Source: Pelomyxa schiedti (lineage: Eukaryota; Protista; Evosea). From it: a stretch of DNA of 53,656 bases. The stretch lies in assembly GCA_020536535.1 (NCBI GenBank), contig JAHLWZ010000900.1, positions 1 through 53,656 on the forward strand. Direction: 5' to 3'. The notes under the pieces were generated by a model, which was given only the letters and a program-made list of their open reading frames with translations, searched no databases and was not told the DNA's origin. Position 1 is the stretch's first letter. The number at the start of each line of letters is the position of its first letter. Shown one piece after another: positions 2,705 to 52,192 of this stretch. Both the position numbers and the translations under genes were made by a program.

Positions 2705-3127
2705 GGTTAATCATCACAAGAACAATAGAAGACACTACCTTGGGATGGTGCACATAGTGGTCTAAGGTCCATTTCGGGGATGAGGAGAGTGTCAGTCCTC
2801 AGAGAGTATTGTGTGAGGCAACCTGACGAAGTCTCGTAAGGTGAAATGTTGCTGTTTGTAGCTCTTTTTCAAGGGTTTCCCTCTCTTTAAGAATCCACCA
2901 CAATGCACACACTTGTGATTTTGCAGTCTTGCTGAGCAGCTTTTTTTATCGAATCCAAGTTAAGCACTTTCACTTGAATTCTGGCTCTGGTGAGTTGGAT
3001 TGGATCCCTTTCAAAAAGACCCGTCGAACCTCCGGGTGAACCGAACCGGTCCCTCCTGACAACTGAGACCAACAAGAACCATCAATTTCTCCTTACGTTC
3101 CGAATCGTAATTACACCCGCGTGTTCA

Positions 3128-4457: not shown

Positions 4458-4652
4458 GTTTAACCATTCACAATGACACTTACATCGCGACATTGCCTCT
4501 CTGTTACCACAAAGGCAACACTTTTTCAAGACTTGAAAAAACGTTTTGAAATAAAAGTGTTGCGTTCTCTTAGAGGAAGCAAGAAGCCATAGCTGATAGA
4601 CGGCACTTAAGTTACTTCACTTTCCTGGAACGAAGAAGGAAAAACAAAAATC

Positions 4653-16337: not shown

Positions 16338-18849
16338 ATGCCGACGATAGCAGTATTTGTCGACGAGCTCCATCGCCTTTTGGGCAGGACTCTAAGTACG
16401 TGGAATCTTTCTTTACTGTTTTTGTTTTTTTTTTTGTCCCCCGTGTTTAATTGTATTTTATCTCTGTGTTTATTACTGTGCTTGTTGATTCACGTTTTGA
16501 CCGGGAACAAAAAAAGCTATTGCAAAGTTCAAGGACCTATGCTTCGATTTCGGCATTGAATTGGACTCTGTGGTTTGCATTCTTCTTCCTTCGTGAATAT
16601 GTTTACCATTGACACTTAAATGAAACAACTCTCAGGAATTCATCACCTTTCTCACTTTTTTTTTTTTTTGTTGTGAAAAAGACCTCTGAGGCAGAGATGG
16701 CTGGCAAAGGGGAAAAGGCCTCCACTGGCGACACATCTGACGCCCTTATATACAAGATAGAGGTTGCTGCCAACAGATACGACCTTCTATGCACTGAGGG
16801 AATTGCACGTGCTCTACGCATTTTTTTGGGTGACATGGAACCCCCTACTTACGTTACCACACGCCCTGAAATCACCATGCTGGTGGAGGATCAGGTTATC
16901 TTACCTTCTTCTGCCAGTTCACTGAAATCGGAGTTCCTTAGGTATTTGACGTTCGCCCAATCGTTGTGTGCGCGGTATTGAGAAACATGGTCTTCACGGA
17001 GCACTCATATAAAAGCTTCATTGACATGCAAGATAAGCTTCACCAAACACTATGCAGGTGAGGCATTCTGTACACTTGTTTTGCTTTGTTATTTGAGATG
17101 TATCTCTTATACTCCCACAGAGAACGGTCTCTGGCCTCAATAGGGACACACGATCTTGATACTATCAAACCACCATTCCGATATACAGCTCTTCCACCCA
17201 ACGAAATTGTCTTCGTCCCTCTGAAATGCACAACTGCAATGAATGGACATCAACTTATGGAGCACCTTTCTGTAAGTGTCATTTCTCCCAGTTCTGTGGT
17301 ACTGAGGCTCTAAAAAAGAAAGACCTTAAATTGGGAAGATACCTGAATCTGATTCGAGACAAACCAACTTATCCCGTGATTTACGACAGCAACAATGTTG
17401 TTTTGTCACTACCCCCAATAATAAATGGTGAACACAGCAAAATTAGTCTCCATACAAAGAACGTTTTCATTGAGGTAAGCCAGTTCTGCCCTACTTTGAT
17501 AGTCTCTTACCTGCATTCAGGTTACAGCACTTGACCTCACAAAGGCGAAAATGGTACTCGATACTGTCGTGACAATGTTTTCACAGTATTGTACCCCCCA
17601 ATGGAGGTTGGTCTATACCGTTGAAGTGTAAGTTCTCATAAAAGGAAAGTGTGGAACAGGTGAACATTGTTGGACGGAATCCCATGGTTTTACCTGACCT
17701 ATCGCCACGAACGCAATTGGCCTGCGTGTCAAAAATCAACCGTGGACTGGGTCTAAACCTTACAGCAGATGCCATGCTTAAACTTTTGGTGAGGATGGGT
17801 GTACCTGGTGTTGCCACCACCCCAGACACCCTGAGTGTTTCTGTGCCTGCTACGAGAACAGGTGCCTTTTCACCACTCCCTCTGCTCTGCCCTGACCTAT
17901 CTAGATATCCTTCACGAATGCGATATTCTAGAGGATGTGGCAATCTCTTACGGCTTCAATAATCTCGTGCCACAACTCACGCCCACTCCTACTATTGGTT
18001 CACAGCTACCAATGACGAAAATTACCGAATTACTAGCCCAAGAAGTAGCAATGACAGGCTTTTGTGAAGTAATGAACTTCGCACTGGTATCCTCTCTTTG
18101 AAGGAATTTTCCACCGAGTAATATCTTTCCAGTGCTTGTTGTCTGATAACTTTGCTTCCCTGAATAGGCCAAACAATCACAGCGCAATTCAAATCCTCGA
18201 GTCCAGTTCAGTTGAATTTGAGGTACCCTTTTCTTTGTTATTGTAATTTACGTTCAAATGCACTTCAAGTCGGCACGCACGACACTGTTATCCGGTTTGT
18301 TGCACACTGTGTCAAACAACAAGACTGTGCCACTACCAATTAGAGTATTTGAAATTGGTGATGTAATAATTCGTGATGAGACCGTCCCTGTGGGAGCTAA
18401 AAACCAGCTGTATGCCGAATAATACGCATTTATCCGCTAACGTACAACCAGAAATTTTGCAGCATTGTACTGTGGTACAACATCTGGTTTTCAGGTATCC
18501 CTTTTTTTTTGTTCCCTTTCCTGTTTGCTAAACTTTGGTCTCAGTTCATCCACGGGCTTATAGATAGGGTTATGCTTCTCCTTAACATAGCCTCCAAAGA
18601 GGTGGCACCTGAAGCAACCCTATTCTACAACTTGGAACCCTCAGCAGGCAAGTTTCACTCTTCACTTTATGCAATACTTACATCAAAACAGACCCATCAT
18701 TCTTCCCCAAGTGGAGGGCTGACATTAACGTCAACAACAAGAAAATTGGCTCTATGGGAGTTGTGCACCCCAACGTCACCAGAAAGTTCGGAATTGACTT
18801 CCCCTGCTCCGCTGTGGAAATCACCCTGGAAATTCCACACGGCCTGTGA
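16338..18849 (+). CDS. FARSB: Phenylalanyl-tRNA synthetase beta subunit (cytosolic), many short introns
   Basis: MPTIAV..LGRTL|[115 protein letters not shown]; stop TGA at 18847-18849. Confidence 0.95.
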
Positions 18850-19069
18850 GCAAAAATATCTTTTTCCCTTGTGCCATTTAGGTGCTAAAACCCATTTATG
18901 ATGTCTCACCACCATAAAAGAATTTTTTTTGCCGAATAATTACACAGGCTCCTACTCTTTGGTGTGTAGTGTCTGGTTTTTGTGGAATTACTTCGTTTAG
19001 GAAGTAAAACACCCAACAGTAATAACAACAGCAGAGCAGGAGAGGAGGAGAGTGGTTGAGTGTGAGTAT

Positions 19070-20060
19070 TTAGAGTGGCATCCTTCCTTTCAGATAGGCG
19101 CCTTTCTTCGTATTGTAGCTGCGGGCACTGAGGTACGTCTGAAGCATTTGAGGGACTGGAGTTCGGCATCTCGTGATCAGGGTCAAAAATGGGAGTAGCT
19201 GATTCAACTCTGTATCTTCAAGGGAGCCAAGATAGCTACCGATTGCGTAGCCGTTCTGTAACTGAAGCGTGAAGGAGGCTTGTGAATTGTCCACGATAAT
19301 CACATCGTTAAGGTCGCGACCGAGGAGACTCAGATCCTGTTACGGTCAATTAGCGATTGGAGTTGTATAGTATGGAGTGTTACAAACCTTGATGTAGAGA
19401 CCGTCAATGAACGTGCATGAATCCCGATAAAGTCTGGTGGAGATAACTCTGTTGACGTCGACAAAATCGACAACCGGGTCGGCATACTAAAACAGGAATT
19501 AAAACCAACGAGAAGCTTTCTGGGACTAAAAACCTGTGGTTCGCTTGCTGTCCACAAAACGATCTCGAATCCTTTTTCTTTTAGTGCGGCCAAAAACCGT
19601 TCCACCCCAGGTCGTTTCTTCACGTAGGCTCTTTCGTCGTCGACTAGGACCACGAAATCGGGATTTGGAATGGGCTAAGAAAAGTAAGTTAGTATGCGAG
19701 ATATAACTGGAAAGAACTCACTTGATAAGACGTTCTGATTAGTGTCTCGTCCAAATCCAGAACAACCGTTCTCCGGGCTCCAGAAAGAGGACGAAGCAAG
19801 GTTTTAACTGGACTAAAAGCAAAAAGATTAGAAGGTAGTGCCTACGTGAATAAAAGATAGTACCTTGCGGGTTTCGTTGTGCACTCGGAAAAAGGCTTGG
19901 ACAACCAGTTCAGGAACATCCGCAGTGGGGATTCTTCTGTCGGTGTTGGCGACGAAGACGAAGTTGTTGTAGATGTCGTAGTCGTTGTTGACGACGCCGA
20001 CTCGGACGACGAATGAGCCGCCGAAGATGAGTGATACGTAGCGACGCAAATAGCGGCCAT
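19070..20060 (-). CDS. CTD small phosphatase-like protein (FCP/SCP HAD family, NIF domain)
   Basis: [10 protein letters not shown] (DxDxT), [67 protein letters not shown]. Confidence 0.9.
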
Positions 20061-20453: not shown

Positions 20454-22738
20454 TCAGCTTTCTCCTCTTGAGTCCTTGCGTCTAAGCGAAGTCATTTTTG
20501 TGGATACGGCGAATGACATTTCTTCAACAGCTATTGGTTGGGGAGAGTTAGAGGAGTGAAATGTGAATAGTATTATGTTCATAAAGGGGAAGTGGTAGTT
20601 ACTTGGTAATGTGAATACACTGTGGGAATGCTTGGGAGGTACTGGGGGCTTGGGTTCATACCCGGCACTTGCTGAGCTTCCGCTGCTGTTGCCAACAAGT
20701 TGTATTCCAGAAGGTACCTCGGGTAGAGAGAATGATGATTCCGGGGAGTGAACTTGAGTGTTGGCACCCACAAGAGGGGGTGGGTGATGTGTTGATGACG
20801 CTGGCTTGGGCGGAATGGGAGGGTTTGTGGTTGGCTGTGGTGGAAGCTGATTGGGAGATGGTAGCTGTATTGGGGTGCTGGAAATTGGTTTAGGAGGTAA
20901 TGGTGGCGCGGTTTTCGGTTGGAGAGGTGCCTTTGGTCCAACAGAAGCGGCACCATGTGGAGAAATGGCTGGCTTCACTTTTGGTGGTCTAGGAACTGGC
21001 CTGATGTGCGGTTAAAAAGATATTGACAACCTGGTAGTAAAACCAATCATCCATATTGGGGAGAACTACTTGCTCGACGAGCTGTGCTCTAATCCTTGCT
21101 CTAAAACGCTGTAAGCTTCACAATACTGCAGCTTACATACATAACAATATTTGCAAGTTTTGGAATTTGATGCATCTCTACTCGGGACATGGCACCGACT
21201 TGTGTGTCGATGGAAAACTCGAAAACTGGCTCAGAATGGAATCCTAGTTCACATAAGCATCTCCCCATAATCGCCATTTGGCATACCAACCCACATTCTT
21301 TGACTTGGAGGCGCCAGACAATGTACACGAACCTTGAAATGTAAGTTTTACGGGATGTAGTACTGCAATACCTTTCCCGCTAGGGCACTCAAAGCAACAG
21401 TAATAACAAGGGGAATATTGACATGGTGCTTTACTACAGGGATAGCTACATCTATCTGCAGTTCGATGCTTATATGGAAACCACCAGCGTACATAAATTC
21501 AGCATCAACCACCTGCAAATGTATTCCAATAAGCCTAGATCATTGACTATTAAGAACATAATTGATCAGGAACCAACGCTATTAAGTACTTTTATCATTA
21601 AGGGCTTAGGGTATATCTGACCAACTCTCCAGCGGGAGATAAGGAAAGTAAATCCACTCCAAAAACAACAGGTAAGTTTGGCCCAAGTACGAGTTGCTTT
21701 ACACGTAGTCTAGTAACAAATGGAGGCTATAGAAAACAAATTAAGATTGCGATTATGAAGAAGTGATTACCAAATGGAGTCGGTTAAATTTTTGGTTTAC
21801 TTTCTTCTCTAGAAATTCCAACATTGTTGGATTGTCGTGCACTCCCCAAAATAGTCTATGGAAGCCAGCATTTATAGGGGCTAATCTGCAAAGTTTTAGG
21901 CATTTTTACTGGCCATCACGTATCAGCTACAATTGCTTCAGGACGTTAGGATCACGAACACTTGCGACTCCAGATGTGCTGGTTGTGGGCGAGCACGCTA
22001 AGTTTCCAATCAGAGTAGAAAAGTGCGAAACAATCTTGGGTGTGTTGAGTGTCATTTGGCCGGTTGCCTTTGCTAGGGCATGGTGCCATTTTTCTAATTC
22101 AATGCCATAGTCACAGGACAACCAACATTCGTTGCTGAAGGGTATTTAACTTTCTAGGAAGGGTTTGAGTTGTTAGATTTCTCACCAGCCAGGAAACAGC
22201 TCACGTGTCTTGTTTTCCAAATGTATTGAGTTTTCTTTGTGATATTTAGAATACTTTGCCCTGAAAAGAGAGACAGAGCACCCCTCAATACTAAAAACGG
22301 ACGTATAATCCCTCGCCTAAACAATTCGAGTTAAAGTCAAGTTGGTTCCATAGCACATGAACTCACCCCCTCATACAGGAAGCAGAAAATGGTTTTATTT
22401 TTCAGTGCAAGCCAGCTAAGGGGTGGTTCAGCTTGCAGTACTGGTTCACGTCTAAGCCTCACACTTCCCTGTAGGTCTGGCCTCTCCTCACACATTGGTT
22501 TTAGCTTTACAAGAGTGAGTTAGATGGGAAACAAACAGTTGCACATTACTATGTGAATTTTTGTCATCGTGGGTTTTTGTTGATGTACCTTAGAGAGTGA
22601 TGTTCCGGCGGTCACATCGATCACGGGCGGATGACAGCACTTGCCTGCCGACGAAAAAATAGCACTGTACGCCACATAGAGGAAGAAACACGATCCTAAT
22701 ACGAAACCCACTACAAACAACGCTATCCCAACAACCAT
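20454..22738 (-). CDS. TEX2/Nvj2-like lipid-transfer protein (N-terminal TM, PH-like, SMP domain, Pro-rich tail)
   Basis: Hydrophobic MVVGIALFVVGFVLGSCFFLYVAY; PH-type terminal helix ELEKWHHALAKA; SMP-like LINAGFHRLFW..EKKVNQKFNRL, LVLGPNLPVV, VHCLAPPSQRMWVGFHSEP, VVLPNMDD; Pro-rich exon 20454..20978. The 3' end is approximate. Confidence 0.75.
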
Positions 22739-22929
22739 CAGTTTTCAACGGAAACCTGCCACGAATGTGGAGAAAAGAGGGTGATGACTGATTGAGACTG
22801 AGGATATCCTCGAACATCGAAACCTAAGCACAGGAGAGCTTTCACACAAAGTGGAAGTGTTCTGACTGAGATGATTGCTGTTCACGAAAAAAGGAAAAAA
22901 AACTGTCTTTTGACTCAAACGAACCGGAG

Positions 22930-25900
22930 ATGACAGGAAATGATACCTTACAGGTCAAGTTGTCAGGTTTTTTTGTTTTACTTGCAGCTACTATGTCAAT
23001 TTCTCCCGCGTGTTTGGCCAGAAAGTCCCACAATTGTACCAGAAATTGGAATGGGTAGCGCCACTGAGACACTGTGTACCGTGTTGAGGACACTGAAGAA
23101 GCCTTGCACGGTGGCTGGCTTGAGGGAACTGCTATCTATGTCCGAAGTTCCGCCCCCAATGCAGCCGATTTTCAAATCCAAGTTGGGATGGATTCTAAAG
23201 CTGAGGCGTAGATTGGTGCCGGCCGTAGATCCGGGCGGAACCCCGTCGTCCAGAATCGATTCTTTCCCAGAGGCTCTGAATGTGGCCGGATTCCAGGATC
23301 TCGAGGATCTCTTCGGCTTCGGCGACCCGGGAAAGCTCCTTTCGAAGTTTGGGATTCCAGGGGACACAGCCGACAAGCTCCTGCAGCAAGTAAAGGGCCT
23401 CCTCTTTAGAGGAGGTTATACATTGGAACCGGCAAGCGAGGCCCACACCTTGGTCACTACAGTCACCGAGACTCAGAACGAAAGCACAGTGAACAGAGTC
23501 ACTCTTGTATCACAGAATGTTGTGAATCTGATCAACTTCATTCACCGTGGTTGCTGTTCACCAAGCGGTGACAGCATCGCCTTTGACAAACTCGATGACG
23601 CTTTTGACCTTGTCACCATCGGGCTTTTTGGTGACCTGAAAACTGCAACGGATTTTCTTGTGCGAACTGGCGCTTTTCCTAAAGGGAATAAACTTCCTGT
23701 TAATGGGCAGGCAGAGATACACGCCTTCACCACCCGATTTGCGGAAGGTTCTGAAATGAGAGGCAAGTCAGTGATGATTCTCGTTTTTGTTCCAGGGAGC
23801 ACAAGCTTTTCCAACGTTCAGGAGTCTGATCCTGCATGCCTCTTCCTGCGGCTTCTTTACACCCTTTGTGACAGGATTTTCATGTGCTTGTCCGAGGCGA
23901 TGCTCGCTGAAGTTTCAGGTTTTGAGCATAATGGAGTTCTTGATTACCTCTATCTTATGTTTGAGAAGTTCCCACTCGCAACCTGCTGTTATAAAGAAGA
24001 AAAACCTCACAGGTTGACAGTGGTGTTGCCAACAGCAGCAACACCAGAGGTAAATAGCTTTCTATCCAAGCACATTGGCCAATACAACCAAAGACTGGTT
24101 TCCAGGTTCAAACCCACAAGCCCCTTTTGTTTGCTCGGCACTGTAGAGGAGCTTCTCTCCAATATATTTTTTTCAACTGCTCATCAAGGTTGGTTTGAGT
24201 CTGAGACGAAACCGCTCCAACCAACAGGGTTTGGAACGTGGCTGAAGATACTCATTTCACTCGTTCCCGTCCAGATTGCTCGCGTCGAAAACAACTGTTT
24301 GGTGCTGTGCAACAATACATCTTCACAGGGAAATGTTTCATTTGGACTTCTTGATGCAATTTTCTCTGCATGTATCGACACACAAGTTCTTGTTGTCACA
24401 TCGATGGGAAAACAGAGCACAGGGAAGAGTTACACTCTCAATCACCTCTTGGGTGTTCTCTTTGACTCTGGAGGTAGGGGCACTGATGGTTGTTGGATGA
24501 GTGTTCGCGAGTTCGCTGATTGCTTGACTGTGGCTTTGGACTTTGAAGGACTTTGCTCTCCGGAGCGTTCTGAACAGGAGGACCTTCTCCTTTCTGTGTT
24601 GAATGCATCCGTTTCAAATTTGACTCTTTTCAAGACTGAAAGTTTGATTGATCGGGAAACAGAAAGAATGTTCAGGAACTTCCAAGAGGGTGTTGGACTA
24701 TTGAAAGGAGATGACAGGCTCTTCAAGTGTTGTTTCACTCTCATGGCAAAAGATGTCCCTGAACGAGACACATCGAGTTTAACCTTGGAATTCCAGACCA
24801 AATTTACGAGCCTTTCCCAAATGTTTTCAGGGAAAATCAAAATGATAATGTGTTCCCCACTTGGTACACGTGGATACAACAACAACCTCAAAGAGTGTGT
24901 CGAAATACTCAAAGAACAGACACCACAATTCCACAGTGGAGGAGAGTTCTCCTCGATGCTCAAGCTGATTCTCGCGAAGTTGCACTTGAAAGATTGGTCT
25001 TCCCTCCAAGGTCAAGACATGGTGGTTGTGGCGCGAATGCTCCAAGAACAGCTCTCTCTGGCAGTCAATTATGGTGGTGAGTCCGCATCCGTTGGCCACC
25101 ATGGACAACTTGTAAACTTGTCAACTGGGGAAATTGTTCCCCATCCCGAATCGGTCACCATCTCCGGCCTCAACCCAGAAATGCCGTCTGATTTAAGGTC
25201 ATGTGCCCGTGCTCGGACTCCCACATGTTTCAAGCAGCCAACCTTTCACATTCAAATGGCCGACGGGGAAAGACTGCTCAATTGGCTACGGCTTCAGCAC
25301 ATTGAATGCGGAACCCATTTCAAGACCTGCCGAGAGAAAGACGCAGTTGACGGGCCAACTGTTCCCCTTCTTGCCACCTTCATCGCTACAGAGATTTTCA
25401 GTGCGTTAGTACAATGTGACAGTATTTTTCGCATTCACCTCACAGTGCAAAGGTGTAAGAACCCTTTCCGCATTAGGGTACCAATGCAGAGCCCTGGTAA
25501 TTGGGAGTAATTATAATAGCCGATACAATGACACAATACTTGTTGCCGATGTTTGTTTGCCTCTGACTAGGCTTTATACGCTCCTTATTCCTCGTTTTTA
25601 CTTATTCACCAACAGTTTCTGAAACACACATGCCACTTCACAGTGATGGAGGAACCCAATCCGGTCACATGGACAGGCACACTGGATCGCTTCCTTCCCA
25701 CTCCGATTGATAACCCAGAGTCTGCAAAAGTGTGTCTCATAAAGCTCTCACACATTACTGTAATTTCTAATTACCCAGGTTGCAAGTATTTTTTACTTCG
25801 CAGGAATCGCAAAGCAGGTTGGATCGCAACAGAACTTGCTGTTGGGTGATGGAAGTACAGTTTCTTCATCATCTACAACAGACCTCATCATGCCATTTAG

Positions 25901-26449
25901 CAGTATTATGTCACGCATCTCTGCTGAATCTAATTTGGTCATTGCGATAATTGACGCATTCCAGTCAGAAACTACCGTTGGAGGGCAGTGGGTGACTAGC
26001 AAAATCATTGACCAGAGCTTCCTCTTACACATTCCAAACCATAGATAAATCATTCTGGTGCATTTACCTATCGCCGAGGAACGGAGCAATTAGCGCGAGA
26101 CCAGCTTCCAACAGGTTATTACTTAGTTTTTTCTGCGAATCCTGGTTTGTTGTTTCTGCCTTGTTAATTCGTCCCAATCTTACAAACCAAAACAGGGGGC
26201 GGGGTGTTCACAAAAAGAATGTTCACAAGATGCTTCCAAGATGGTACTTTCCCAACAACAGACTATGGAGAGCAAACAGCTAACAAATGAACAAACAACA
26301 ACTGCACCACAGAGCTTTCGAGCGCACTTCCAGGGACACCCTTCGATGATATCGTGGATCGCGCAGTGACTCAGGTGCAGATACTCACATCTGGGTCTCA
26401 GTGTCCGTGTGTAACTGACACCGTCGGCAAAAGATTCGCTATTTTCTGA
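22930..26449 (+). CDS. VLIG/GBP-like GTPase paralog 2: compact, internally deleted form ending in a spliced pseudo-caspase domain
   Basis: Short exon 1 (MTGNDTLQVKLS) with the family splice donor; uninterrupted ORF to ~25400 with GKQSTGKS / GGRGTDG / DFEG; then small exons RALVIGSNY..NDTILVAD|FLKHTCHFTV, IFYFAGIAKQ..IAIIDAFQ, PGTPFDDIVDRAVTQVQILTSGSQCP..RFAIF* (stop ends 26449). One small exon near 26140 appears to have lost its AG. Confidence 0.75.
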
Positions 26450-26519
26450 AACAAAAAACCAAGTTGAGCTTCCTGCTACTGTGGCAAAGAAGCACTAGAA
26501 AGCGTAAAAACGAAAAATT

Positions 26520-29500
26520 ATGTCAACAATCCGGGAGGCACTGTCGCGGGCGGGGATCGATGTGAAACCACTTGATGACCTGAACTTCGACTTGGACGTG
26601 CTTCCGTCCGACGACTTCGTCTCGCAAGTTGCTGAAAACCGAGTGTATATGGACGCGAACTACTACAACACCGTATACGCCGTTGCCGTGCGTTGTCTTG
26701 CTGAAGAACGAAACAACTATGAGCGGCTGAGCCGGAAGTTGTCAGGTTCTTTTCTTCCCATTCTTTTTGTAATGAGTTCTTAATTACTGGTGTATAAAAC
26801 AAATTCATCCCACCAAACTCCCTGGTTATTTATAAGTATCATTAAAAAAAAAATGAAAACAGAAATTGGGATGAGTTGTGCCTCAGACTCCTTGTGTGGA
26901 GCATTGAGGACACTGGGAAAACCCTGCACCTTGGAAGCTCTGAGGGAAGTTCTGTCTCTTCCTGAAATTCCCACACATTTGCTCCAGGCTTTCGATTCCA
27001 AAGTAGGGTGGCTCCCAAAGCTTCGGCGGAGATTATTGCCGATAACGGACCCCGGCGGAACCCCGTCATCTAGGATCAAATCGTTCCCAGCAAAGTTGAC
27101 CGCGGCAGGATTCCAGGACTTGGAAGACCTTGCTTATTTGGATTCAAATGATTTTGAGAAACTAGTGGGGTCACTGAAAGTTTCAAAGGGGACCGCCATC
27201 ACCGTATATCAGCAAGCAAAGACCATTGTTGGAGAGAGCAATAAAGTACTTCACTATACACTGGATCATGCCACCGTAATCAAAAGCTTGATCACCACTG
27301 TCGGAAAAGCGGTCACCAATGCCACGCTTGTCTCACAGAATGTTGTGAACCTGATCAACTTCATTCGCCGTGACTGCTGTTCACCCAGTGGTGACAGCAT
27401 TGCATTTGACAAGCTTGATGGAAGTTGTGACTTTATCACCATTGGGCTTTTTGGTGACCTCACACTGATCACCAATTTCCTGGTGCGAATTGGTGCTTTT
27501 CCTGAGCACAATAAACTGCCTGCGAATAATGGGCAGGCAGAGATACACGCCTTCACGACTCGGTTTGCTGAATGCTCAGCAATGAGAGGCAAGTCAGTGA
27601 TGATTCTCGTTTTTGTTCCAGGGAGCACAAGCTTTTCCAACGTTCAGGAGTCTGATCCTGCGTGCCTCTTCCTGCGGTTTCTTTACACCCTTTGTGACAG
27701 GATTTTCATGTGCTTGTCTGAAGTGATGCTCACCGAACTCCAACACGAAATTGGAGAAGCTGAAGCTCGAAGGCTTTTTGAATGTGAAGTAGAGAAGACC
27801 TCAATAAAAGAAGACAGGTGCGAGTTCCGGAAAGGCTTTGCCCAGGACCTCAGCCTCCCACCATCAGATTCACCTTGGACAATGATCCAGGGAGATAACA
27901 GAGTTGGTTTTGTCTGTTGGGAGGAAATCAATGAGAGCACCGTGTATACCCCACTGACTGGCCAGATTCCTATTTCTTACTTTACAGGGCAGTTCAAGGA
28001 TTTGTTGGATGGGAGGGAGCTGTGCACTGACATCCTCCCTTATCTCAACAAGTTGGCACTTCTTCGATTGCTCAATCCCACTGCTGCCCAAGCCCTTGAA
28101 GAAGTAAATAAGAGACGAATTAGGAATCTTCAGAGTGTGGCAAAGGATCAAATTCAACGTATACTCATGAAATACTTTCAGCACGAATGGGAACTACTGC
28201 TTCTTAAAGCACCACGTTCACTGAGCGATTGCTCTGCTGACCAAACGAGCCGGAGAGATGCCGTCGGGATATGCCTTTCCAAGGCCACGTCTGTTGTATT
28301 TCCATCACGTTCTCTGAGCGATTGTTCTGCTGAGTTGGACCAAACTAGGCTGAGAGATTTCGTCGCGACATGCCTTTCGAAGATAACGTCTGTTGTTTTT
28401 CTCTTTGAGGAGTTTTTCCCCGATAAGACCCAACGTCAACTCCGTGATTTCTTGAGTCTCACAGAACATGAAATGAAACAGAGAATCAGTCAATTTGCGA
28501 GCGACCCACCAAGACCCCACGTTCCACTTTCTACTTTTTCGTCCTTGGCGTTCGAGCCGCACTTCGTCTCTGAAATCACTTCCGCGTTGAAAAAGAAATT
28601 TACGTCTCAGTATAAATCGCTCCTCAAAGAAATACAAGATGATGTGTGCAACAACCCCGAAAAATTTTGCCCAACGTTCCTTATCGATCTGGACACAGCA
28701 ATCCGCACAGAAACTGCAAGTTCACAGTTGAGGAAATAAGTTTGGAGAAGGCAACTGATGGGGGTTCCAATGTCACTCTCGCACCTCCTTGTTGTTTTGA
28801 TGTGGGTGTATCCACTGTTCTTGGCTGTTTCCTCTTGCCTGGAGGCAAAATTATGGTTGTTGGTGTTGATGCTGACCCTCCAAATTATCTCATCTGCGTT
28901 CACCAAGAGGGCACAGGCTCCCTCAGTTCGAAACTGCCAAAGAAAGGTTGCATTTCCCAGTCAACTTTTGTGCAGCAACGAGAATGCTGGTGATGTGTTA
29001 CTCCTCACCGGACCTCATTGTCTGTGCTCTGAAATTCAACGAGTCATATTCGAAATATGACAACCTGGGCAGTTTCTCAATTGCTGATGATGCCGATCTT
29101 GCAGGTGTGAATGGAATTTTCCCGGTTCCAGAAGGACAAAAGGTTGTTGTGACATTCCCAACAGTGGCCAAGCTTTTTGACTTTGAGCAAAGAACTATTT
29201 CGGATTTGCCACAACTTGATGGGCCTGCACTTTTCCTCAGTCCAGAATTATTCGTCACTGTGAAACCTTCACTTCCAATCGTTGCAGGAACACCTGATGA
29301 GAGGGGGTCGTGCTTCGTTTCTGTGAGGAGTTGCCTGCAACCATCGATTGTTCAGCACTCGGAAACAAACCTCCTGAACTCACACCTGTTGCCCTCAACG
29401 CTTCTGGTAAACTTTCAATTTTGTAATGGGGAACCAGAATCCCATTTGATTCAATTCGACCCCACTTCTCATCACTTTCCACAGTGATCTTGAGTGCTGT

Positions 29501-32480
29501 GATGAAACAAACAAATTTCTCACTGCAGATGGCCTCACAACCAACTCACCCTTTGTGTTCACCGTTGGATTATCTACGTCTCATGTTTGACAAGTTCCCA
29601 ATCACAGCCGTTTTTGGTAGTCAAACTGAAGAGAAAACACACAAGTTGACTGTGGTGGTGCCATCAGCAACACCCGAAACAAATATGTTGATCTCCAAGC
29701 GGATCATGGGGTATAAAGACAAACTTGTTGATCTTTTCAAAGCACTTGGCACAGCTGACAAGTTCTTCATGGAACATGTGACTTGCAGCATTGATCAAGG
29801 ATGGATTGAGACCGACCCACTCCAACCAACAGGGTTTGGAACGTGGCTGAAAACACTCATTTCACTCGTTCCCGTACAGATCGCCCGTGTCAACAACAAC
29901 TGTTTGGTGCTGCGTGACAGATTTTCACAGGGAAATACTGTTTGTTTTACACAAACCCAGCACAGTGTTGCAGAGGGAATTTCGTTTGGACTCCTCGACG
30001 CGATCTTCTCTGCGTGTTTCAACAAACCAGTTCTTGTTGTCACATCGATGGGAAAACAGAGCACAGGGAAGAGTTACACTCTCAACCACCTCTTGGGTGT
30101 TCTCTTTGACATCTCTGGTGGGAGGTGCACTGATGGTTGTTGGATGAGTGTTCGTGAGAGATCTGATTGCTTGATTGTGGCTTTGGATTTTGAGGGACTT
30201 TGCTCTCCGGAGCGTTCTGAACAGGAGGACGTCCTCCTCTCTGTGTTGAACGCCGCTATTTCCAACATGACACTTTTCAAGACTGAATTTAGAATTGATT
30301 GGGAAACAGAAAGAATGTTCAGGAACTTCCAAGAGGGTGTTGGAATGTTGAAAGGGGATGACAAACTCTTCAAGGGTTGTTTCACTCTCATGGCAAAAGA
30401 TGTTCCTGAACGAGACACCTCGAGTTTAACCTTGGAACTCAATAACAAGTTCAAGAGAATTGTTCATGCGAACCAGGGGCAAAACTCTCTCAAATGTTTC
30501 CAGGAAAGGTCAATATGGTAATGTGCCGTCCACTTGAAACACGTGGTTACAATGACAGCCTCAAAGAGTGTGTCGAAATACTCAAAGAACAGACACCACA
30601 ATTCCACAGTGGAGGAGAGTTCTCCTCGATGCTCAAGCTGATTCTCGCGAAGTTGCACTTGAAAGATTGGTCTTCCCTCCAAGGTCAAGACATGGTGATT
30701 GTGATTCGAATTCTCCAAGAACAGCTCCCTCTGGCAGTCAATTATGGTGGTGAGTCCGCATCCGTTGGCCACCATGGACAACTTGTAAACTTGTTGACTG
30801 GGGAAATTGTTCCCCATCCTGAATCGGTCACCATCTCCGGCCACAATATCCCCATGTCCACCTTCAACCTGCAGGCAGATTGCGAGGCAGACTATACTAG
30901 GATATGGGAGCAGCTCAAGCACTGTTTTGGGCAATGTCTTCCAGTACCCGCAATGCAGTCTGATTTCAGATCATGGCAGTGTAATTTCAGGGAGTTTGTG
31001 CACCAAATCATTGAGACACGGAAGAAGCTTGTGAGGGATTGAGAGCCGTTCAAATATTAAATGTGATTTTTATGCACCCACTGGACCTGAGAACAGGTGT
31101 CCTGAAGTCAAAGATTTTTTGAAGAAAGTGGAGTGTTCCTTTCGCCAACTGAATTCACTTGAAGTTTGCCAAGGGACTTGTGCTGCGTGCAACTTTCCGT
31201 GCTTGCTTCTACACGTGCATTCAGGGCAACACAACTGCCATGGCTCCCACAAGTGTGACGCCGAGTGTACTTATTGCCAGTCCGCAGGCACAACATGTAC
31301 TTACCCGGCTGGCCACGATGGTGACCACGACTGCAAAAGAGGCCACAAATGCAACAAGGACTGCACTCTCTTGTGCAAAACATGTTGCAACAGATTCTGC
31401 TCTCTTTTACCCAGTCACTCCAGTCCGTGCATGTGTGGTGGACAACACCTGTGTGGTGAGAAATGTGCTGCTATAGGCCCAAAAGAATCCTGTAGCCAGC
31501 CGTGCACCCTCCCTTACAACAATCATCAAAAACACAACTGTGGAAGTGGTCACTGCCTGCACAGTTGCAGTTTCCCAAAGTGTACAAAGCCATGTGCTTC
31601 AGAAGATCATTTTCATGGGAATGAACCCTCAGCTTCAGTCTACCAACACTCCTGTGGCAGAGATCACCCCTGCCCATCAGAGTGCGAGGTTCCTGGCTGG
31701 TGCAAGGTTGAGTACATACAGAAAGTGGACGATGTTTCCTATAATGGCTGAAGGAAAACATTTGTTTTTCAGAAATCGACTCTGCCAGTAGCAATAAAGT
31801 GCCGTTGCTGTATAAAGGTTCCGTCAGGGCAACAAGAACACCTCGGTTCTCACGTTTGTGAATACCCAGCTGCCCATCGTTGCAAAGACACCTGCCCAAC
31901 CTGTGGTTATATTTGTGAACACAATTTCGGACACCCTGGTAAGCATGAAACAAAACACGGTAACATGACCAAAACGCAATTTGTTTCCAGTGGCAGAAAC
32001 TGAGGTTTGTATGAAGTTGGTGAAACTGGGGAGGCAGAGATATGCAATTTATTCTGCAACAAACTCGGCAGGCACATCCACATTCTTCCCTGTACGGTGG
32101 AGGGCAATGCCCCCTGCCCTCACACGGGGAAAGGAGGTAGAAGACATTCCACCACGAGATACCTGCCAGACCCAAATACTCCAAAGGATGAACTCACACA
32201 TGATAGCTACTGGAATGCAATTAACTTTGGTGATCCTTGCACAGCGGAACAAAGAGAAATTTTCGGAATGTGCAACTTTGAGTGTGGTGAAACTCACACC
32301 AATGAAGAGTCCAGGTGCCAGTGCATGCTCCCTCTTTGGCACGTAAACAGTTTGTTAGCTGTCAATGTATTTAATGAAAGAAAAAGGTCAGACTACCGTG
32401 CGGCTCTTATCTTTATGTCAGATGGAGACGACGAGAATTCTGAATGGGAAAAGAGCATGAAAAAAATCAAAAAACAGAAT
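26520..32480 (+). pseudogene. VLIG/GBP-like GTPase paralog 3 (VWA type), disrupted
   Basis: Homology continues across ORFs 26520, 26790, 28646, 28948, 29484, 30494, 31119 and 32007, with frameshifts or stops near 28730, 28958, 29478, 30485, 31040, 31749 and 32003; only the IFMSDG part of the VWA domain remains. Confidence 0.85.
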
Positions 32481-34596
32481 ATGGTTGCACCTACACCCCA
32501 CCCAAGCCCACGCCCCCTTCCCTTCCACACCCCACTACACATCCAAAAAATCACAGGAAGAAGGGCACCTCCTGATGAGACCTCTACCACGCCACTCCCC
32601 CGGTTTTTGTTCCTTATTGTTATTCCACAAAACTCAAACGATCGGCTCAGGAACTAAAAATAGTTTTTTTTGAGAGTGACGATATTCCTCTGTTGCAATC
32701 GAGCTTTGTCTTGTCAAGATTCGGTAGTGCAACGGTAAGTCCAACATCTGGAAAGTGAAAGAACCAGGTTCAACTTCAACCTAAATTTTAAGTGTTTTAA
32801 AGGCATATACTGTACCTTAGGACAATATTCATGTCCATACATTGATGGAGTTTTGGATCTGAGTTTCGCATTTGGTTGTTTCACAACAACCTGCTTCATT
32901 GAATGCTGCCATTGGGGTATCTAAGTTTGTGAATAACAAAGAAGGAACATAATAATAAACAACTTTGAATCATTTGGTTGGGTATAATGGGTTCACCCAT
33001 TAATGAAGGTAAGGAGGATGAGAACCTCTTGAAGGGGGATTCTGCAAATGGAGGTGTGGTGACCACCACCAGCTCGTAGAGATAACACTGAGGAAAGGCT
33101 GCCAACCTGGAGCCTCAAATTAGAGTTTCCCAAACCACCATCATAATGGAGTGGGAAAATGATGTAGTAAAGAGAAGCTCACATTACCAAAGTTCAATCC
33201 TGATAAGATGGAGGTGGTGGATTGGTAGAGTTAAACTTGCCATCAAGTTCGAGTTGCATATATTGCAAGCACTATCTGACACTCTGAGAATGTTCAGATG
33301 CAAGTTTAACTCATTCTCAGAGTGTCAGATAGTGCTCACAATATATGCTGCACCAAGGGAGAACAAAGAGGCACAAAGTATAGTATTCTTGGAATGGATA
33401 CATCTGGGTGTAGGTTTTTTGTTTGTCAATTTTGTATAGAAATGAGGTGTCCATGGTGTGTGTTGAGATTCCAAAGTCACAAGTCTTCTCTGAACACAAC
33501 ATACACAGAAGCATACAATGGTGTATAAGCTAGATATGTCAAGGCTTTTTCTGGCTTTGACACAAGTCTTCTCCCAGCAACTACTTGTACTGTCAAACAA
33601 CAGGGTAAAACAGCTGCTGATCTTGTGGAATGCTAAGACTACAAGCTTTAAACCTCAAACAGTTTGCACTACTGTTTCTTCATGAAAACATGGGGGGTAA
33701 GCCATCTGGGCATTTATTAAATTTACTTCTTGGGAACAGAATAAAGGGGGGTTGGGTTTTGAGTGGTGAATGTTATGGGTAGAGTCTGCTGTGATTGGTT
33801 TCTGCTATGATTGGTGGGTGTTGTGCCTGGTACTTTGTCTGGAAATCTCTATTTTGCTGGTTGGGTATACTGGTGTTTATTGTAATCATCTTTAAACCTG
33901 TGTGAAGCCTTTAGGGTGGATTGTATTCAAATCTTGGGTGAACAATGGTGGTTGTTTGGATTTTGGCCTGGGTTGGTAAACCCAATGCCCCACAGACTTC
34001 CACACATGCTAATTCTGGTGGGAGTGTTGAGGTGTGGAAATGAAATAAATAGCCCTATAATGGTTTTGGCTGCAGATTTGGCTGAGTCTGGGGAGTTGGG
34101 AATTATGTTGAGGGTCTTCATTGGGTTCAGTTTCAGTTCTTGCCGGAGTTCCAAATTATGTTGGCACCTGTCTCTGGTGAATCACATCCATGCTGGCAAG
34201 TCAGAGCGACTTTGCATACATGGGCCATGCGATTGTTAAGGGGTTTCATGTTGGTTACAACCAAGAGGGCTTGGTTCCGGATTGAGGGGGGGATGCCTGG
34301 GGTGTTGAGGTTCCTTACTAAGTTTTGCCAATAAGGATGCCAAGGTATTTGTACTTTGTTACTGTCTGTACTGGCCACACAGTTGATGTTCTATCTTTGG
34401 CCTGTGGGGGGTGGGCTGCCAGGACTTCTGTCTTCTTGTAGTTCAGAGCAGCTCCTGTAGCCTGACAGTATAAATTGAAGATTGAAGCTCCTGTGTCCAG
34501 GTCCTCTAGATTCTTCTAAATAGTGCAGATGTCATCTGCATATGCTAATACCTTTGGTTTAACTGGGGAGTCATGGAGTTTCATGAGAAGTGTCTA

Positions 34597-36351: not shown

Positions 36352-36411
36352 GATTGATTAGGTGGTTTTAAGGGGGGCTGTGAGGGGGCTGAGCCCTGAG
36401 TGGGGTTTGGG

Positions 36412-37674: not shown

Positions 37675-38277
37675 TTAAAGTTTACTAGGGGTGTAGGTAG
37701 TGTTTGTTTATTGTTTTCAGTTGTGTGGGCAATTGTTTGTCGTCTTCCGTCGCCACGCTCCGCTAACATGTCGGAAGCTAGTTACCGGAACCGAAATTTG
37801 CAATTGTTTTCAGTGGGTTGCACTTGCTGCACATCTACAATGTTCTGTGTGATTCAGTTCAGATTCACAGCCTGAGGGCTGGTACTCAGGTTGTTCCCCC
37901 ACATAAAAAGACAATCAAGAAAACTCCTGTCTGGTCTTTCAAATCATTTAGAATGTGTCCCCGAATGTTCATGCTTCTGAGATGGCATTTCTCCTCATGA
38001 GCATTGACTCAGATGCAGATCCTGGGCACTGTCACTGTTTTCCACTGACACCACAGCCAAATTTTTGCTCTCTTCTGATTGAAACAACCTTCTCTTGGTT
38101 GGTGCCCCGTAATTTCAAAGCTCACTCGTGGTGGGTGCCTGCCTAACGGGACCCAAATATGCCAGTCCGAATGTTCAAGAACATCCACAAAAGCACAACT
38201 TGTAATAACAACAAAGTTGATGAGACTAAATTTGACACCTAATCCACCAGCGGGAAAGTTAATTCCTGGACGGAATC

Positions 38278-46199: not shown

Positions 46200-46300
46200 C
46201 GCGATCGAAGAACGATGTCAAACCACTTGAGGAACCGGGACTTCGACTTGGACGTCACCCCCTTCGTCCACGCAGGAAGCGGCAGTAGCCTAAGTTCAGG
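46200..46300 (+). pseudogene. Degenerate relic of family exon 1
   Basis: cgatgtcaaaccacttga..ggacttcgacttggacgt..gcaggaagcggc..tcaggt matches exon 1 of paralogs 3 and 5 in collapsed form. Confidence 0.65.
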
Positions 46301-46453
46301 TAAAAACCCTTGGACATCCGTGAGAGTTCCAGTTCCACAGTGAAGTGCAAAAACACTTGCACAATCAAAGGCAGATGTCTCATGTCTGAGGTATCATTCC
46401 GAGGTATGATAACAAGTGGGGAACAAAAAAACCAGGTCAATAAGGGGAAAAAA

Positions 46454-49400: not shown

Positions 49401-52192
49401 ATCCGAAACAAAGAGACTGATCTCCCAGCGTCTCGGGGAATATAAAGCAAAACTTGTTGGTCTTTTCAAAGCACTTGGCGCAGCTGACAAGTTCTTCATG
49501 GAACATGTGACTTGCAGCATTGATCAAGGATGGATTGATACCAAACCACTCCAACCAACAGGGTTTGGAACGTGGCTGAAAACACTCATTTCACTCGTTC
49601 CCGTTCAAATCGCTCGTGTTGACAACAACTGTTTGGTGTTGTGCAACAACAATTTATCTTCACAGGGAAATGATCCGATTCAATTCGCACAAACCCAACA
49701 CAGTGTTGCAGAGGGAATTTCGTTTGGACTCCTCGACGCTATTTTCTCATCATGTTTGAGCAAACCAGTTCTTGTTGTCACATCGATGGGAAAACAGAGC
49801 ACAGGGAAGAGTTACACTCTCAACCACCTCTTGGGTGTTCTCTTTGACATCTCTGGTGGGAGGTGCACTGATGGTTGTTGGATGAGCGTTCGTGAGAGGT
49901 CTGACTGCCTGATTGTGGCTTTGGATTTTGAAGGACTTTGTTCTCTGGAGCGCTCTGAACAGGAGGACATTCTACTTTCTATTTTAAATGCCTCCGTTTC
50001 AAATTTAACACTTTTCAAGACTGAATTTACAATTGCTCAGGCAACAGAAAAAACGTTCAGGAACTTCCAAGAGGGTGTTGGAATGTTGAAAGGGGATGAC
50101 AAACTCTTCAAGGGTTGTTTCACTCTCATGGTGAAAGATGTTCCTGAAAGGATGTTGAAAGTTTATGTTCGGAATTCCAGAAACGGTTTAACAGAATTGT
50201 GGAAACAGACCAGGGAGAAGACTTCCTTTCTCAAATGTTTCCAGGAATGTTCACGATGATTATGTGTTCCCCACTTGGAACTCCTGGCTACAATGATAGC
50301 TTGAAGAGCTGTGCCGAAATACTGCAACAGCAGACACCACAGTTCCATAGTGGAGGAGAGTTCTCCTTGATGCTCAAGCTGATTCTCGCGAAGTTGCACT
50401 TGAAGGATTGGTCTTCCCTCCAGGGACAATATATGGTGATTGTTATTCGAAAGCTCCAGGAACAGCTCCCTCTGGCCGTAAATTATGGTGCTAAGTCCAC
50501 AGTTGAAGTACACCATGACCAAATTGAAACTTGGTCAACTGGGGAAGTTTTTCCACATACCGAATCAGTCACAGTCTCTGGCCTCAACATTCCCATTTCG
50601 AAGTTCAATCTGCAGGCAGATTGTGAGTCAGAACACATCAGGGTACGAGACGAGTTAAAGTCTTGTTTTGAGAAATACCTTCCAATGCCTCAGTCCAATT
50701 TTGGTTCATGGCACAGTCAATTCCGGGAATTTGTCACCCTAGTCATTGAGAGCCGGAAGAGGCATGTGATGGCTTGGGTCAGTTCAAACATGAAACCTGA
50801 ATGGAACCAATTCCCTGAAGCGCAAAACCTCCTTACGCAAGCGAATACTGCAATTCAACAGCTGGAAACACTCAAACTTTGCACAGACACTTGCACTGAG
50901 TGCCCCTTGTCGTGCTCACTTTTGCGTATACATTCAGGAAAACACTGCTGCTGGGGCTGCAGTATTCGGACTCTCACAGGTTTCAGACAGCCAACCTTTC
51001 ACATTCAAGTGGCTGAGGTGGAAAGACTGCTCGATTGGGTAAGGCTTCAGCACGTGGAATACGGCACCCACTTTACAATCAGCCGAGAGAAAGACACAGT
51101 TGAGGGGCCAGCTGATCCCCCTCTTGCAAGATTCATTGCGACAGAGATTTTCAGTGCGTTATTGAACAACGTGGCATTTTTTTACGTTCACCTCACAGTG
51201 AAAAGGTGTAAGAACCCTCCCTGCCCTAGGGTACCAATGCAGAGCCCTGGTAATCGGGAGTAATCTACAAAACAGCAGACACAGTGACCCGGCAGTCATT
51301 GCCGATGTTTGTATACTCCTTCTTCCTGGTTTTTTACTTATTGACAACAGTTTCTGCAAAACACTTGCCACATCACAGTGATGGAGGCACAAAAGTCGGC
51401 CATATGGAAAGGTACCCTGGAGCGATTCCTTGCCCCAATTGGTAATCCGGACTCTTCAAAGGTGTGAAAAATAACGCTCATCACCGAAACAACGCACTTG
51501 TGTTTGACGCGTTGGTTCCAGGTTGCAAGTATATTTTACTTTGCAGGAACCGCAAAGCAAGTTGGCTCACGCCAGCACCTGCTATTGGCTGATGGAAGTG
51601 CCAGTGTTTCATCATCCACAACGGACCTCATAATGCCACTCAACGACATCGTGTTCTGCATTGCCGCACAATCTCATTTGGTCATTGCGATAATTGACAC
51701 ATTCCAACCAGAAAATACCGTTGGAGGGCAGTTGGTGACTACCAATATATATATAATATCTACATAGCTTCAACTTACACCTTCAAATCATAGATAACGC
51801 ATTCTGGAGCATTTAGTTACCGCCCAGGCACCGAACAACTGGCACAAGACCGGCTCCCAACAGGCTGTTACTTGGTTTTGTCTGTGAATCCAGGTTTGTT
51901 GTTTCTCCCTTACTCGTCCCGATCTTACAAATGATTTAGGATGTGAAGCGTCCACGAAACGAATTTTCACAAGCAGTTTCCGAGAAGGTACTTTTCTTCA
52001 CTCAAAAACCAACAAAAAACAAATAGAAGAAACAAAACAACTCCACACTATATAGTGCTTTTGGGTGCGGCGCCAGGGACACCTTTTGACAACATTGTGG
52101 AATGTGCAGTGACTCAAGTGCAGATCCTCACGTGTGGGCACCAGTGTCCGTTTATCACTGACACCATCAGTCAAAGATTTGCTCTTTTCTGA
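46454..52192 (+). pseudogene. VLIG/GBP-like GTPase paralog 5 (pseudo-caspase type), disrupted
   Basis: Exon 1 MQTVREALSRAKIDVKPLDDL; deletion/frameshift ~47320, TGA at 48744-48746, frameshifts ~49160 and ~50150. GTPase motifs intact; only the first Cys cluster is kept; spliced caspase-fold exons end QRFALF* at 52192. Confidence 0.82.

What the first reader, a model, noticed from the sequence alone, without database searches (positions are those of the whole stretch)
25453..26449. Hidden multi-exon caspase-fold domain with a substituted catalytic dyad, fused to GTPase paralog 2
Splicing the short introns yields the peptidase C14 elements in correct order: RALVIGSNY..NDTILVADFLKHTCHFTV..TLDRFL (cf. 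ALVIGNxxY..NDAxxxxxxLxxxGFxV), SIFYFAGIAKQVGSQQNLL (cf. FYYAGHGxQxxGxNYL), LVIAIIDAFQ (cf. IVILDACR), then VFTKRMFT and PGTPFDDIVDRAVTQVQILTSGSQCP..RFAIF (cf. PGxxxxxxFxxVxxxVxxxTxGxQxP..FxF). The His position is Ile (25806-25808) and the Cys position is Phe (25959-25961). The pattern looks closer to bacterial caspase-like/paracaspase than to type I metacaspase (inference). It may act as a scaffold, decoy or allosteric regulator, by analogy to cFLIP.
Basis: partly seen in the sequence, partly recalled or inferred. Interest (0 to 1): 0.86.

Follow-up and report, generated by a model that had tools for sequence, protein, structure and literature searches.

The report
Amoeba GTPase with dead caspase tail
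An anaerobic amoeba (Pelomyxa schiedti) has a real, spliced gene that joins an immunity-type GTPase to a caspase-shaped domain lacking both cutting residues; the domain is still under selection, so it probably works as a docking or pairing module, not as a protease.

Summary
Confirmed. In Pelomyxa schiedti, six short exons (25453-26449) continue a GB1/RHD3-class (VLIG/GBP-like) GTPase frame. Single-cell RNA contigs show five of six introns spliced, including the one that skips the 25510 stop. Intron 2 was seen only unspliced, but its position is shared by all 13 paralogues mapped. NCBI already models the fusion (KAH3744801.1, auto-named 'TRIP12') without recognising the domain. The domain reaches the Pfam C14 cut-off, folds as a caspase (MALT1 best, Z 17.6), and has His-to-Ile879 and Cys-to-Phe930. 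It belongs to a Cys-less subclade (six genes) of an amoeba-specific SAM-paracaspase expansion; five of the six are fused to P-loop NTPases of three classes. dN/dS among dead copies is 0.24-0.29. The SAM is cut to a remnant, substrate loops are eroded, and the alpha5-beta6 (dimer-face) exon is the best kept. Best reading: a non-catalytic dimerisation module on an oligomerising GTPase, probably partnering active paralogues (cFLIP-like); this is inferred, not shown. Copy B (50966-52192) follows a frameshifted GTPase. The scan already noted this family, and dead copies on MoxR, small-GTPase and ankyrin genes, on other DNA.

The parts
22930..22965 (+). First exon of the NCBI model KAH3744801.1 (residues 1-12); alternative start is the Met at 23051
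   Evidence: protein-to-window mapping; no RNA contig covers it
23042..23914 (+). N-terminal region shared with the four other GTPase paralogues; fold unknown
   Evidence: 65% identity to paralogue 4 residues 1-294; dN/dS 0.23; AF2 model unusable, pLDDT 38
23914..23939 (+). In-frame junction where about 620 residues of the full-length paralogues (295-912 of paralogue 4) are missing
   Evidence: tblastn; a DNA contig 23863-24239 spans it
24380..24900 (+). GB1/RHD3-class (VLIG/URGCP/GBP-like) GTPase domain: G1 24407-24430, G2 Thr 24482, G3 DFEG 24539-24550, G4 KD about 24749-24754
   Evidence: Pfam URGCP_GTPase E 1e-6, RHD3 and GBP weak, all below cut-off; motifs aligned with oomycete, liverwort and MMETSP protist homologues; RNA contig 24385-25117
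25211..25400 (+). Start of the imported module: truncated SAM remnant (first helix recognisable), in the same exon and frame as the GTPase
   Evidence: A/B similarity starts at 25213/50966; SAM profile of active paralogues matches positions 2-20 only, 0 of 500 shuffles as high; RNA contigs 24934-25298 and 25176-25326 cross the junction
25401..25452 (+). Intron 1 (52 nt, phase 1); its removal fuses the GTPase frame to the caspase exons
   Evidence: spliced in RNA run X2, 74 nt on the short side
25453..25550 (+). Caspase exon 1: strand 1, loop with Asp825 (MALT1 Asp365 equivalent), helix 1
25551..25615 (+). Intron 2 (65 nt, phase 0); not seen spliced; holds a 21-nt insertion relative to copy B
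   Evidence: retained in X1 record 5; position shared by 13 paralogues; alignment
25616..25729 (+). Caspase exon 2: strand 2, helix 2
25730..25778 (+). Intron 3 (49 nt, phase 0)
   Evidence: spliced in X1 and X2
25779..25991 (+). Caspase exon 3: strand 3 with His-to-Ile879 (25806-25808), strand 4 with Asp928 and Cys-to-Phe930 (25959-25961)
25992..26044 (+). Intron 4 (53 nt, phase 0)
   Evidence: spliced in X2 and X3
26045..26144 (+). Caspase exon 4: interdomain linker and strand 5
26145..26195 (+). Intron 5 (51 nt, phase 1)
   Evidence: spliced in X1 and X3
26196..26243 (+). Caspase exon 5: shortened loop (the acidic residue matching MALT1 Glu500 is deleted) and helix 4
26244..26312 (+). Intron 6 (69 nt, phase 1)
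   Evidence: spliced in X1 and X3
26313..26449 (+). Caspase exon 6: helix 5, strand 6 (dimer face in caspases and MALT1), stop TGA 26447-26449; the exon best kept relative to active paralogues
50966..52192 (+). Copy B of the SAM-remnant plus pseudo-paracaspase module (His-to-Thr, Cys-to-Phe), same six introns, behind GTPase paralogue 5, which carries frameshifts
   Evidence: 75% DNA identity; NCBI model Pelo_13813; one RNA contig with B letters spliced at intron 4 (X2 record 12); frameshifts near 47320, 49162, 50147

Best explanation
KAH3744801.1 is a shortened VLIG/GBP-class GTPase whose usual C-terminal Cys-rich and VWA end was replaced, by shuffling within the genome, with a catalytically dead copy of the amoeba's own SAM-paracaspase module. 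SHOWN: splicing (5 of 6 introns), reading frame, caspase fold, loss of His and Cys, origin from the SAM-paracaspase family, purifying selection after dyad loss, intact G1-G4 motifs. INFERRED: the domain cannot cut and probably binds substrates poorly (loop 1 shortened, Glu500-equivalent loop deleted) but keeps the helix-5/strand-6 face through which caspases and MALT1 dimerise. GTP-driven self-assembly of the GTPase would cluster these tails, which then pair with the caspase domain of the roughly 17 or more intact paralogues and tune their activation up or down, as cFLIP-L does with caspase-8. The GTPase would replace the lost SAM as the clustering device.
For: RNA joints and junction-spanning contigs. 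Fold. Cys-less clade UFBoot 81, sister to an intact clade UFBoot 98, rooted on two caspase-family sequences of bacterial type; shared intron positions; shared SAM truncation. dN/dS 0.29 (95% 0.19-0.42) A vs B, 0.24 A vs C807 copy, 0.29 B vs C807; second-position changes 34/232 against third-position 78/232, p 2e-6. All listed indels between A and paralogue 4 inside aligned blocks keep or restore the frame, and the ORF stays open across the 620-codon deletion. The last exon keeps 40% identity to active paralogues (0.73 of the active-active level) against 24-33% (0.39-0.56) elsewhere. Five of six dead copies sit on P-loop NTPases: two VLIG-like, one AIG1/MMR_HSR1-like, two MoxR AAA+. cFLIP-L precedent: PMC11121540.
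Against: No binding or activity data. Strand 6 and helix 5 are also needed for folding, so their conservation does not prove a partner. Intron 2 was seen only retained (one low-depth contig). No single RNA record spans GTPase motifs to caspase exons, and none bridges 25325/25326 by 31 nt each side. No RNA contig lies on 22300-23940. Copy B's GTPase is frameshifted. A has lost most of the helical and Cys-rich region after the G domain, so GBP-like assembly may be impaired. The AF2 model used an alignment containing active homologues.
Confidence: 0.42

Rival explanations
1. The dead domain is a general self-association or scaffold module: it homodimerises or binds an unrelated partner, helps the NTPase assemble, stands in for the VWA domain, and has no link to the active paracaspases.
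For: The same conserved helix-5/strand-6 face serves homodimers; the module sits where VWA sits in sister paralogues; it recurs on three NTPase classes that generally oligomerise; loss of the SAM removes the obvious route to SAM-bearing active paralogues.
Against: The last exon stays closer to the active paralogues than any other part, more than a homodimer free to co-drift would need; weak evidence.
Confidence: 0.25
2. Integrated decoy: the dead domain is bait for inhibitors or effectors that symbionts, viruses or prey bacteria aim at the active paracaspases, and binding switches on the GTPase.
For: Swappable tails in a tandem birth-and-death array with frameshifted copies; the host carries many prokaryotic endosymbionts (PMC8887013); GBP-class GTPases are defence proteins and occur in amoebae (PMC6400534).
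Against: A decoy should keep the active-site surface, yet the catalytic exon and substrate loops are the most eroded parts; no excess of amino-acid change was seen.
Confidence: 0.13
3. By-product of gene shuffling that is now decaying: the constraint is historical and the present gene makes a truncated or useless product.
For: Intron 2 retained in the only contig that covers it, with a 21-nt insertion; large deletions in A; paralogues 3 and 5 already frameshifted; low RNA depth.
Against: On the branch to A alone dN/dS is about 0.21 (my arithmetic on the three pairwise values); no stop or frameshift in 1034 codons despite many indels; five introns spliced; partly processed molecules are common in single-cell libraries (general knowledge).
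Confidence: 0.13
4. The caspase part is expressed on its own from an internal start (in-frame ATG at 25256) and the fusion is only apparent.
For: In-frame ATG in A; RNA tiles do not bridge 25325/25326 in one record.
Against: Copy B has GTG there; RNA contigs cross the GTPase/module junction; the frame is open without an intron from the G domain on; related dead copies are all C-terminal fusions.
Confidence: 0.07

Closest known systems
MALT1 paracaspase domain (human) and bacterial caspase-like C14 proteins
   Same: Best sequence-profile (E 3e-14) and Foldseek match; six-strand core; acidic residues matching Asp365 and Asp462 kept
   Different: His and Cys replaced; Glu500-equivalent loop deleted; no death domain or Ig domains; fused to a GTPase
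cFLIP-L (pseudocaspase partner of caspase-8)
   Same: Dead caspase fold (VIA Z 17.1, tied with MALT1) derived from an active paralogue family in the same genome
   Different: No DEDs; arose separately from a paracaspase-like family; heterodimerisation untested; cFLIP is not NTPase-fused
Bacterial pseudo-orthocaspases (His-Cys to Tyr-Ser; PMC6426788)
   Same: Conserved caspase-like domain without the dyad
   Different: Other substitutions (Ile/Phe, Thr/Phe, Thr/Val, Asn/Tyr, His/Phe), eukaryotic intron-rich genes, different partners
VLIG/URGCP/GBP (GB1/RHD3-class) GTPases, in particular the GTPase + Cys-rich + VWA proteins of oomycetes, Riccia and Taxus
   Same: G1-G4 motifs, 29-54% identity in the G region; tandem expansion
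   Different: None of the 65 homologues from other organisms lists PF00656; this copy is half the size of its sister paralogues and lacks the Cys-rich and VWA parts
Animal GBP - caspase-4/11 axis
   Same: A GBP-class GTPase linked to a caspase fold (PMC6400534 for the animal link)
   Different: In animals these are separate proteins and the caspase is active; here one chain with a dead, paracaspase-type domain. Analogy only.
Pelomyxa SAM-paracaspase family (KAH3759317, KAH3762571, KAH3758966 and others; no paper found)
   Same: Direct parent: 27-35% identity, same intron positions, same C-terminal end
   Different: They keep His/Cys and a full SAM, and carry LRR, MORN, Sel1, ankyrin or Ras N-termini

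Membership tests
Caspase-hemoglobinase fold / Peptidase C14 | Alpha/beta/alpha sandwich with the C14 strand order | tested here: met
   Pfam 21.4 bits at cut-off over 3-232; AF2 pLDDT 77, VIA Z 17.6, rmsd 4.1, 203 aligned
Caspase-hemoglobinase fold / Peptidase C14 | Catalytic His-Cys dyad | tested here: not met
   Ile879 and Phe930: a non-peptidase homologue, not an active member
Caspase-hemoglobinase fold / Peptidase C14 | Proteolytic activity | not testable with these tools
   needs an assay
Paracaspase (MALT1-like) | Caspase-like domain closer to MALT1 than to caspases or metacaspases | tested here: met
   family profile E 3e-14 vs 7e-7; Foldseek ranks 1-29 all MALT1; VIA ties MALT1 with caspase-9, Dronc and cFLIP within 1 Z
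Paracaspase (MALT1-like) | Acidic S1 pocket (Asp365, Asp462, Glu500 in MALT1; numbering from my own knowledge) | tested here: not met
   Asp825 and Asp928 kept, third acidic residue deleted with its loop; intact paralogues keep all three
Paracaspase (MALT1-like) | Type 1 architecture: death domain plus Ig domains | tested here: not met
   no such Pfam hit
Type I metacaspase | Pro/Gln-rich prodomain and two extra sheet strands | tested here: not met
   six core strands in the model, chain ends after strand 6; metacaspases Z 11.4-15.1
cFLIP | Tandem death-effector domains | tested here: not met
   no DED hit
cFLIP | Heterodimer with an active paralogue that changes its activity | not testable with these tools
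   only indirect: last exon best conserved
GB1/RHD3-class (VLIG/URGCP/GBP) GTPase | G1, G2 Thr, G3 DxEG and G4 motifs | tested here: met
   all present and aligned with homologues
GB1/RHD3-class (VLIG/URGCP/GBP) GTPase | Curated Pfam cut-off for URGCP_GTPase, RHD3 or GBP | tested here: not met
   27.7/55, 20.2/42.4, 14.8/21.1 bits: class clear, subfamily not assigned
GB1/RHD3-class (VLIG/URGCP/GBP) GTPase | VLIG size of about 200-285 kDa (PMC6400534) | tested here: not met
   1034 aa; sister paralogues are about 1900-2000 aa
GB1/RHD3-class (VLIG/URGCP/GBP) GTPase | GTP hydrolysis and nucleotide-driven assembly | not testable with these tools
   needs an assay
SAM domain | Five-helix bundle of about 65 residues | tested here: not met
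   only profile positions 2-20 match; middle deleted; one helix in the model
TRIP12 / HECT E3 ligase (NCBI's automatic name) | HECT and WWE domains | tested here: not met
   no such Pfam hit at E up to 10

The most novel reading that the evidence does not exclude
A single-celled amoeba independently built a GTP-gated caspase-control platform: a GBP/VLIG-class GTPase (and, in parallel, AIG1-like and MoxR NTPases) carries a dead paracaspase that, once clustered on a symbiont, virus or phagosome surface, switches the amoeba's SAM-paracaspases on or off. This would combine the logic of animal GBP-caspase-4 and cFLIP-caspase-8 in one chain, without death-fold domains.
Probability: 0.13. Interest if true: 0.85.

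Novelty: new variant of a known kind. Interest (0 to 1): 0.56.

Why it matters
Pseudocaspases are known from vertebrates (cFLIP, caspase-12) and bacteria, and paracaspases were reported mainly from animals and dictyostelids among eukaryotes (PMC3417536). Here an archamoeba has its own paracaspase expansion plus a conserved dead subclade joined to three NTPase classes. I found no paper on this and no GB1/RHD3-GTPase homologue from another organism with a C14 domain. If the dead domain regulates the active ones, pseudo-protease control and GTPase-to-caspase coupling evolved again in a unicellular eukaryote, which bears on how animal inflammasome-like wiring arose. Limits: seen in one species, function inferred, and the scan had already met the family and other dead copies elsewhere in this genome.

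Tried and rejected
Pfam exon by exon: no C14 hit. phmmer of the domain alone against PDB: nothing; a family profile was needed. Word-based homolog search of the domain alone: none; with full-length candidates only Pelo_10993. Idea that the GTPase N-terminus holds a SAM that recruits SAM-caspases: not supported (93/500 and 253/500 shuffles scored as high), and the AF2 model of that region was unusable (pLDDT 38), so no fold search was run on it. Atlas feature searches gave only a lead (0.80, GTPase-like) or nothing. Assembly chimera rejected: a DNA contig 25092-26578 has no difference and RNA contigs cross the junction, though that DNA run may be the assembly's source. Direct bacterial origin or contamination rejected: six spliceosomal introns shared with paralogues. 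Paper searches for Pelomyxa + caspase and related terms found nothing relevant.
Full report
Verdict. The region encodes a caspase-fold domain without its catalytic His and Cys, spliced in frame onto a GTPase. What it does is inferred.

Source. The genome has 52.4 Mb in 5337 contigs, the figures published for Pelomyxa schiedti (PMC8887013). The homolog search returned the organism's own model of this gene, KAH3744801.1, 1034 aa, automatically named 'E3 ubiquitin-protein ligase TRIP12'. It has no HECT or WWE domain. Method note: spliced exons were searched one by one by reference. All whole-domain work used the database's own records (P0001 and P0002), whose exons I mapped back to the window.

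Gene structure. The ORF 22940-25510 holds the GTPase. Single-cell RNA contigs from three runs of one sample show five GT..AG joints: 25401-25452, 25730-25778, 25992-26044, 26145-26195, 26244-26312. Intron 2 (25551-25615) was not seen spliced; one contig of depth 3.3 retains it, which would stop translation at 25620-25622. Against a true loss: donor and acceptor are conserved in copy B, the same donor hexamer works at intron 5, an intron sits at this codon boundary in all 13 other paralogues mapped, and the exons behind it are under purifying selection. RNA contigs cross the GTPase/module junction near 25211 (24934-25298; 25176-25326), but no one record runs from the G motifs to the caspase exons, and none lies on 22300-23940. 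A DNA contig spans 25092-26578 without a difference. These RNA data come from the study that built the gene model, so they are not independent of it.

Fold. Residues 785-1034 score 21.4 bits on Pfam Peptidase_C14 (cut-off 21.4) over positions 3-232. hhalign to an intact paralogue gives probability 99.7. AlphaFold2 on a 25-row alignment gave pLDDT 77, pTM 0.73 and a six-strand core. Foldseek's first 29 hits are MALT1 (best E 3e-8). VIA gives MALT1 Z 17.6, tied with caspase-9, Dronc and cFLIP, with metacaspases at 15.1 or lower. The family profile hits MALT1 at E 3e-14 and caspase-1 at 7e-7. The nearest Atlas models are bacterial C14 proteins. The model leaned on active homologues in the alignment, so it shows compatibility with the fold, not independent folding. 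Ile879 and Phe930 replace His and Cys. Asp825 and Asp928, matching two S1 acids of MALT1, are kept. The loop carrying the third is deleted, and loop 1 is shortened.

Family. The catalytic exon finds 23 loci in this genome. Seventeen keep the His, and the Cys wherever I could read it; five lack the Cys; one lacks only the His. Of 21 relatives among 1.84 billion representatives, 19 are Pelomyxa sequences and two look bacterial. Intact members end in SAM plus C14 and carry LRR, MORN, Sel1, ankyrin/PARP-regulatory or Ras N-termini. Six Cys-less genes form a clade (UFBoot 81; the intact clade 98) and share a truncated SAM joined directly to the first caspase exon. Long branches could inflate that support, but the shared deletions agree with it. 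Their partners are two VLIG-like GTPases (this window), an AIG1/MMR_HSR1-like GTPase (Pelo_10993), two MoxR AAA+ ATPases and one ankyrin-like protein. One MoxR fusion still has the His, which suggests the Cys went first (inference). In this gene the 63 codons before intron 1 are the SAM remnant: only the first helix matches, above all 500 shuffles.

Selection. Exon-wise dN/dS is 0.29 (0.19-0.42) between copies A and B, and 0.24 and 0.29 against the Pelo_10993 copy. All three lack the dyad, so the constraint postdates its loss. Splitting the three distances gives about 0.21 on the branch to A and 0.38 to B (my arithmetic). Second codon positions differ at 34 of 232 sites, third at 78, fourfold sites at 31%. 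Aligned intron interiors differ at 24%, so the size of the effect depends on the neutral yardstick, but not its direction. The last exon (helix 5, strand 6) keeps 40% identity to active paralogues, 0.73 of their mutual level; the catalytic exon keeps 0.45 of it.

The GTPase half. It is one of five tandem paralogues here and about a dozen in the genome. Full-length ones are about 2000 aa and end in a Cys-rich region and VWA, like homologues in oomycetes, Riccia and Taxus. Copy A lost about 620 residues before the G domain and everything after about residue 1350 of paralogue 4, yet stays in frame. G1-G4 are intact, dN/dS about 0.24. Paralogue 3 and paralogue 5 (copy B's host) carry frameshifts, so A is the only intact VLIG-pseudocaspase fusion. 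B joins the module about 80 residues further downstream than A; one fusion followed by a deletion in A is simplest (inference).

Mechanism. Best reading (0.42): a dead dimerisation module. Caspases and MALT1 dimerise through helix 5 and strand 6 (established knowledge), GBP-class GTPases self-assemble on GTP (PMC6400534), and cFLIP-L regulates caspase-8 as a heterodimer (PMC11121540). The GTPase would replace the lost SAM as the clustering device and the tail would pair with intact paralogues. Rivals: plain scaffold or homodimer (0.25), integrated decoy (0.13), decaying relic (0.13), separate expression from the ATG at 25256 (0.07). That the domain is a real, constrained, non-catalytic C14 homologue fused to the GTPase I put at about 0.85.

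Novelty. Pseudocaspases and GBP-class GTPases are known kinds. The architecture is new as far as I could find: no homologue from another organism among 65 lists a C14 domain (length-limited search), and paper searches found nothing. The scan had already noted the SAM-caspase family and dead copies on MoxR, small-GTPase and ankyrin genes elsewhere in this genome; my own searches reached those same genes. Score: new variant of a known kind, interest 0.56.

Noticed in passing
window 26790-32657 and 46310-50232: GTPase paralogues 3 and 5 carry several frameshifts (near 28736, 28960, 29476, 30484, 31042; 47320, 49162, 50147), while paralogues 1 and 4 have long open frames: a birth-and-death array.
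   Followed up: partly
window 24901-25173 vs 30574-30846: 273 bases are 96% identical between copy A and paralogue 3, far above the 75-83% elsewhere: probable recent gene conversion.
   Followed up: no
window 34597-37506, minus strand: Two ORFs between paralogues 3 and 4 look like a non-LTR retrotransposon (zinc-knuckle ORF1; endonuclease plus truncated reverse transcriptase). Recognised by eye, not tested.
   Followed up: no
window 4640-4888, 26506-26749, 38274-38513, 46184-46255, 46466-46689: A conserved short upstream exon precedes paralogues 1, 3, 4 and 5 but is absent in front of copy A.
   Followed up: no
window 23042-23914: The N-terminal region of the GTPases gave a weak GTPase-like feature score (0.80, lead only): possibly a second, degenerate P-loop domain.
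   Followed up: partly
L031:2138-3199: Directly behind Pelo_10993 lies another copy of the same AIG1/MMR_HSR1-like GTPase: a second tandem array with a pseudo-caspase tail.
   Followed up: partly
L048:1438-1782: A SAM-paracaspase paralogue with His replaced by Ser but Cys kept and a full SAM: apparently a separate loss of the dyad.
   Followed up: no
L003-L009 (contigs C511, C165, C406, C694): Stronger Peptidase_C14 matches with long uninterrupted frames (best E 9e-32) that the exon query did not pick up: probably other caspase-like families in this genome.
   Followed up: no
window 24385-25117: An RNA contig continues upstream with letters of paralogue 5; most likely a graph chimera between paralogues.
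   Followed up: no
window 2990-3421, 16673-18901 and 19330-19653: Housekeeping-looking genes flank the array (exosome RNase PH-like subunit, Phe-tRNA ligase beta-like, CTD phosphatase-like). By eye only.
   Followed up: no
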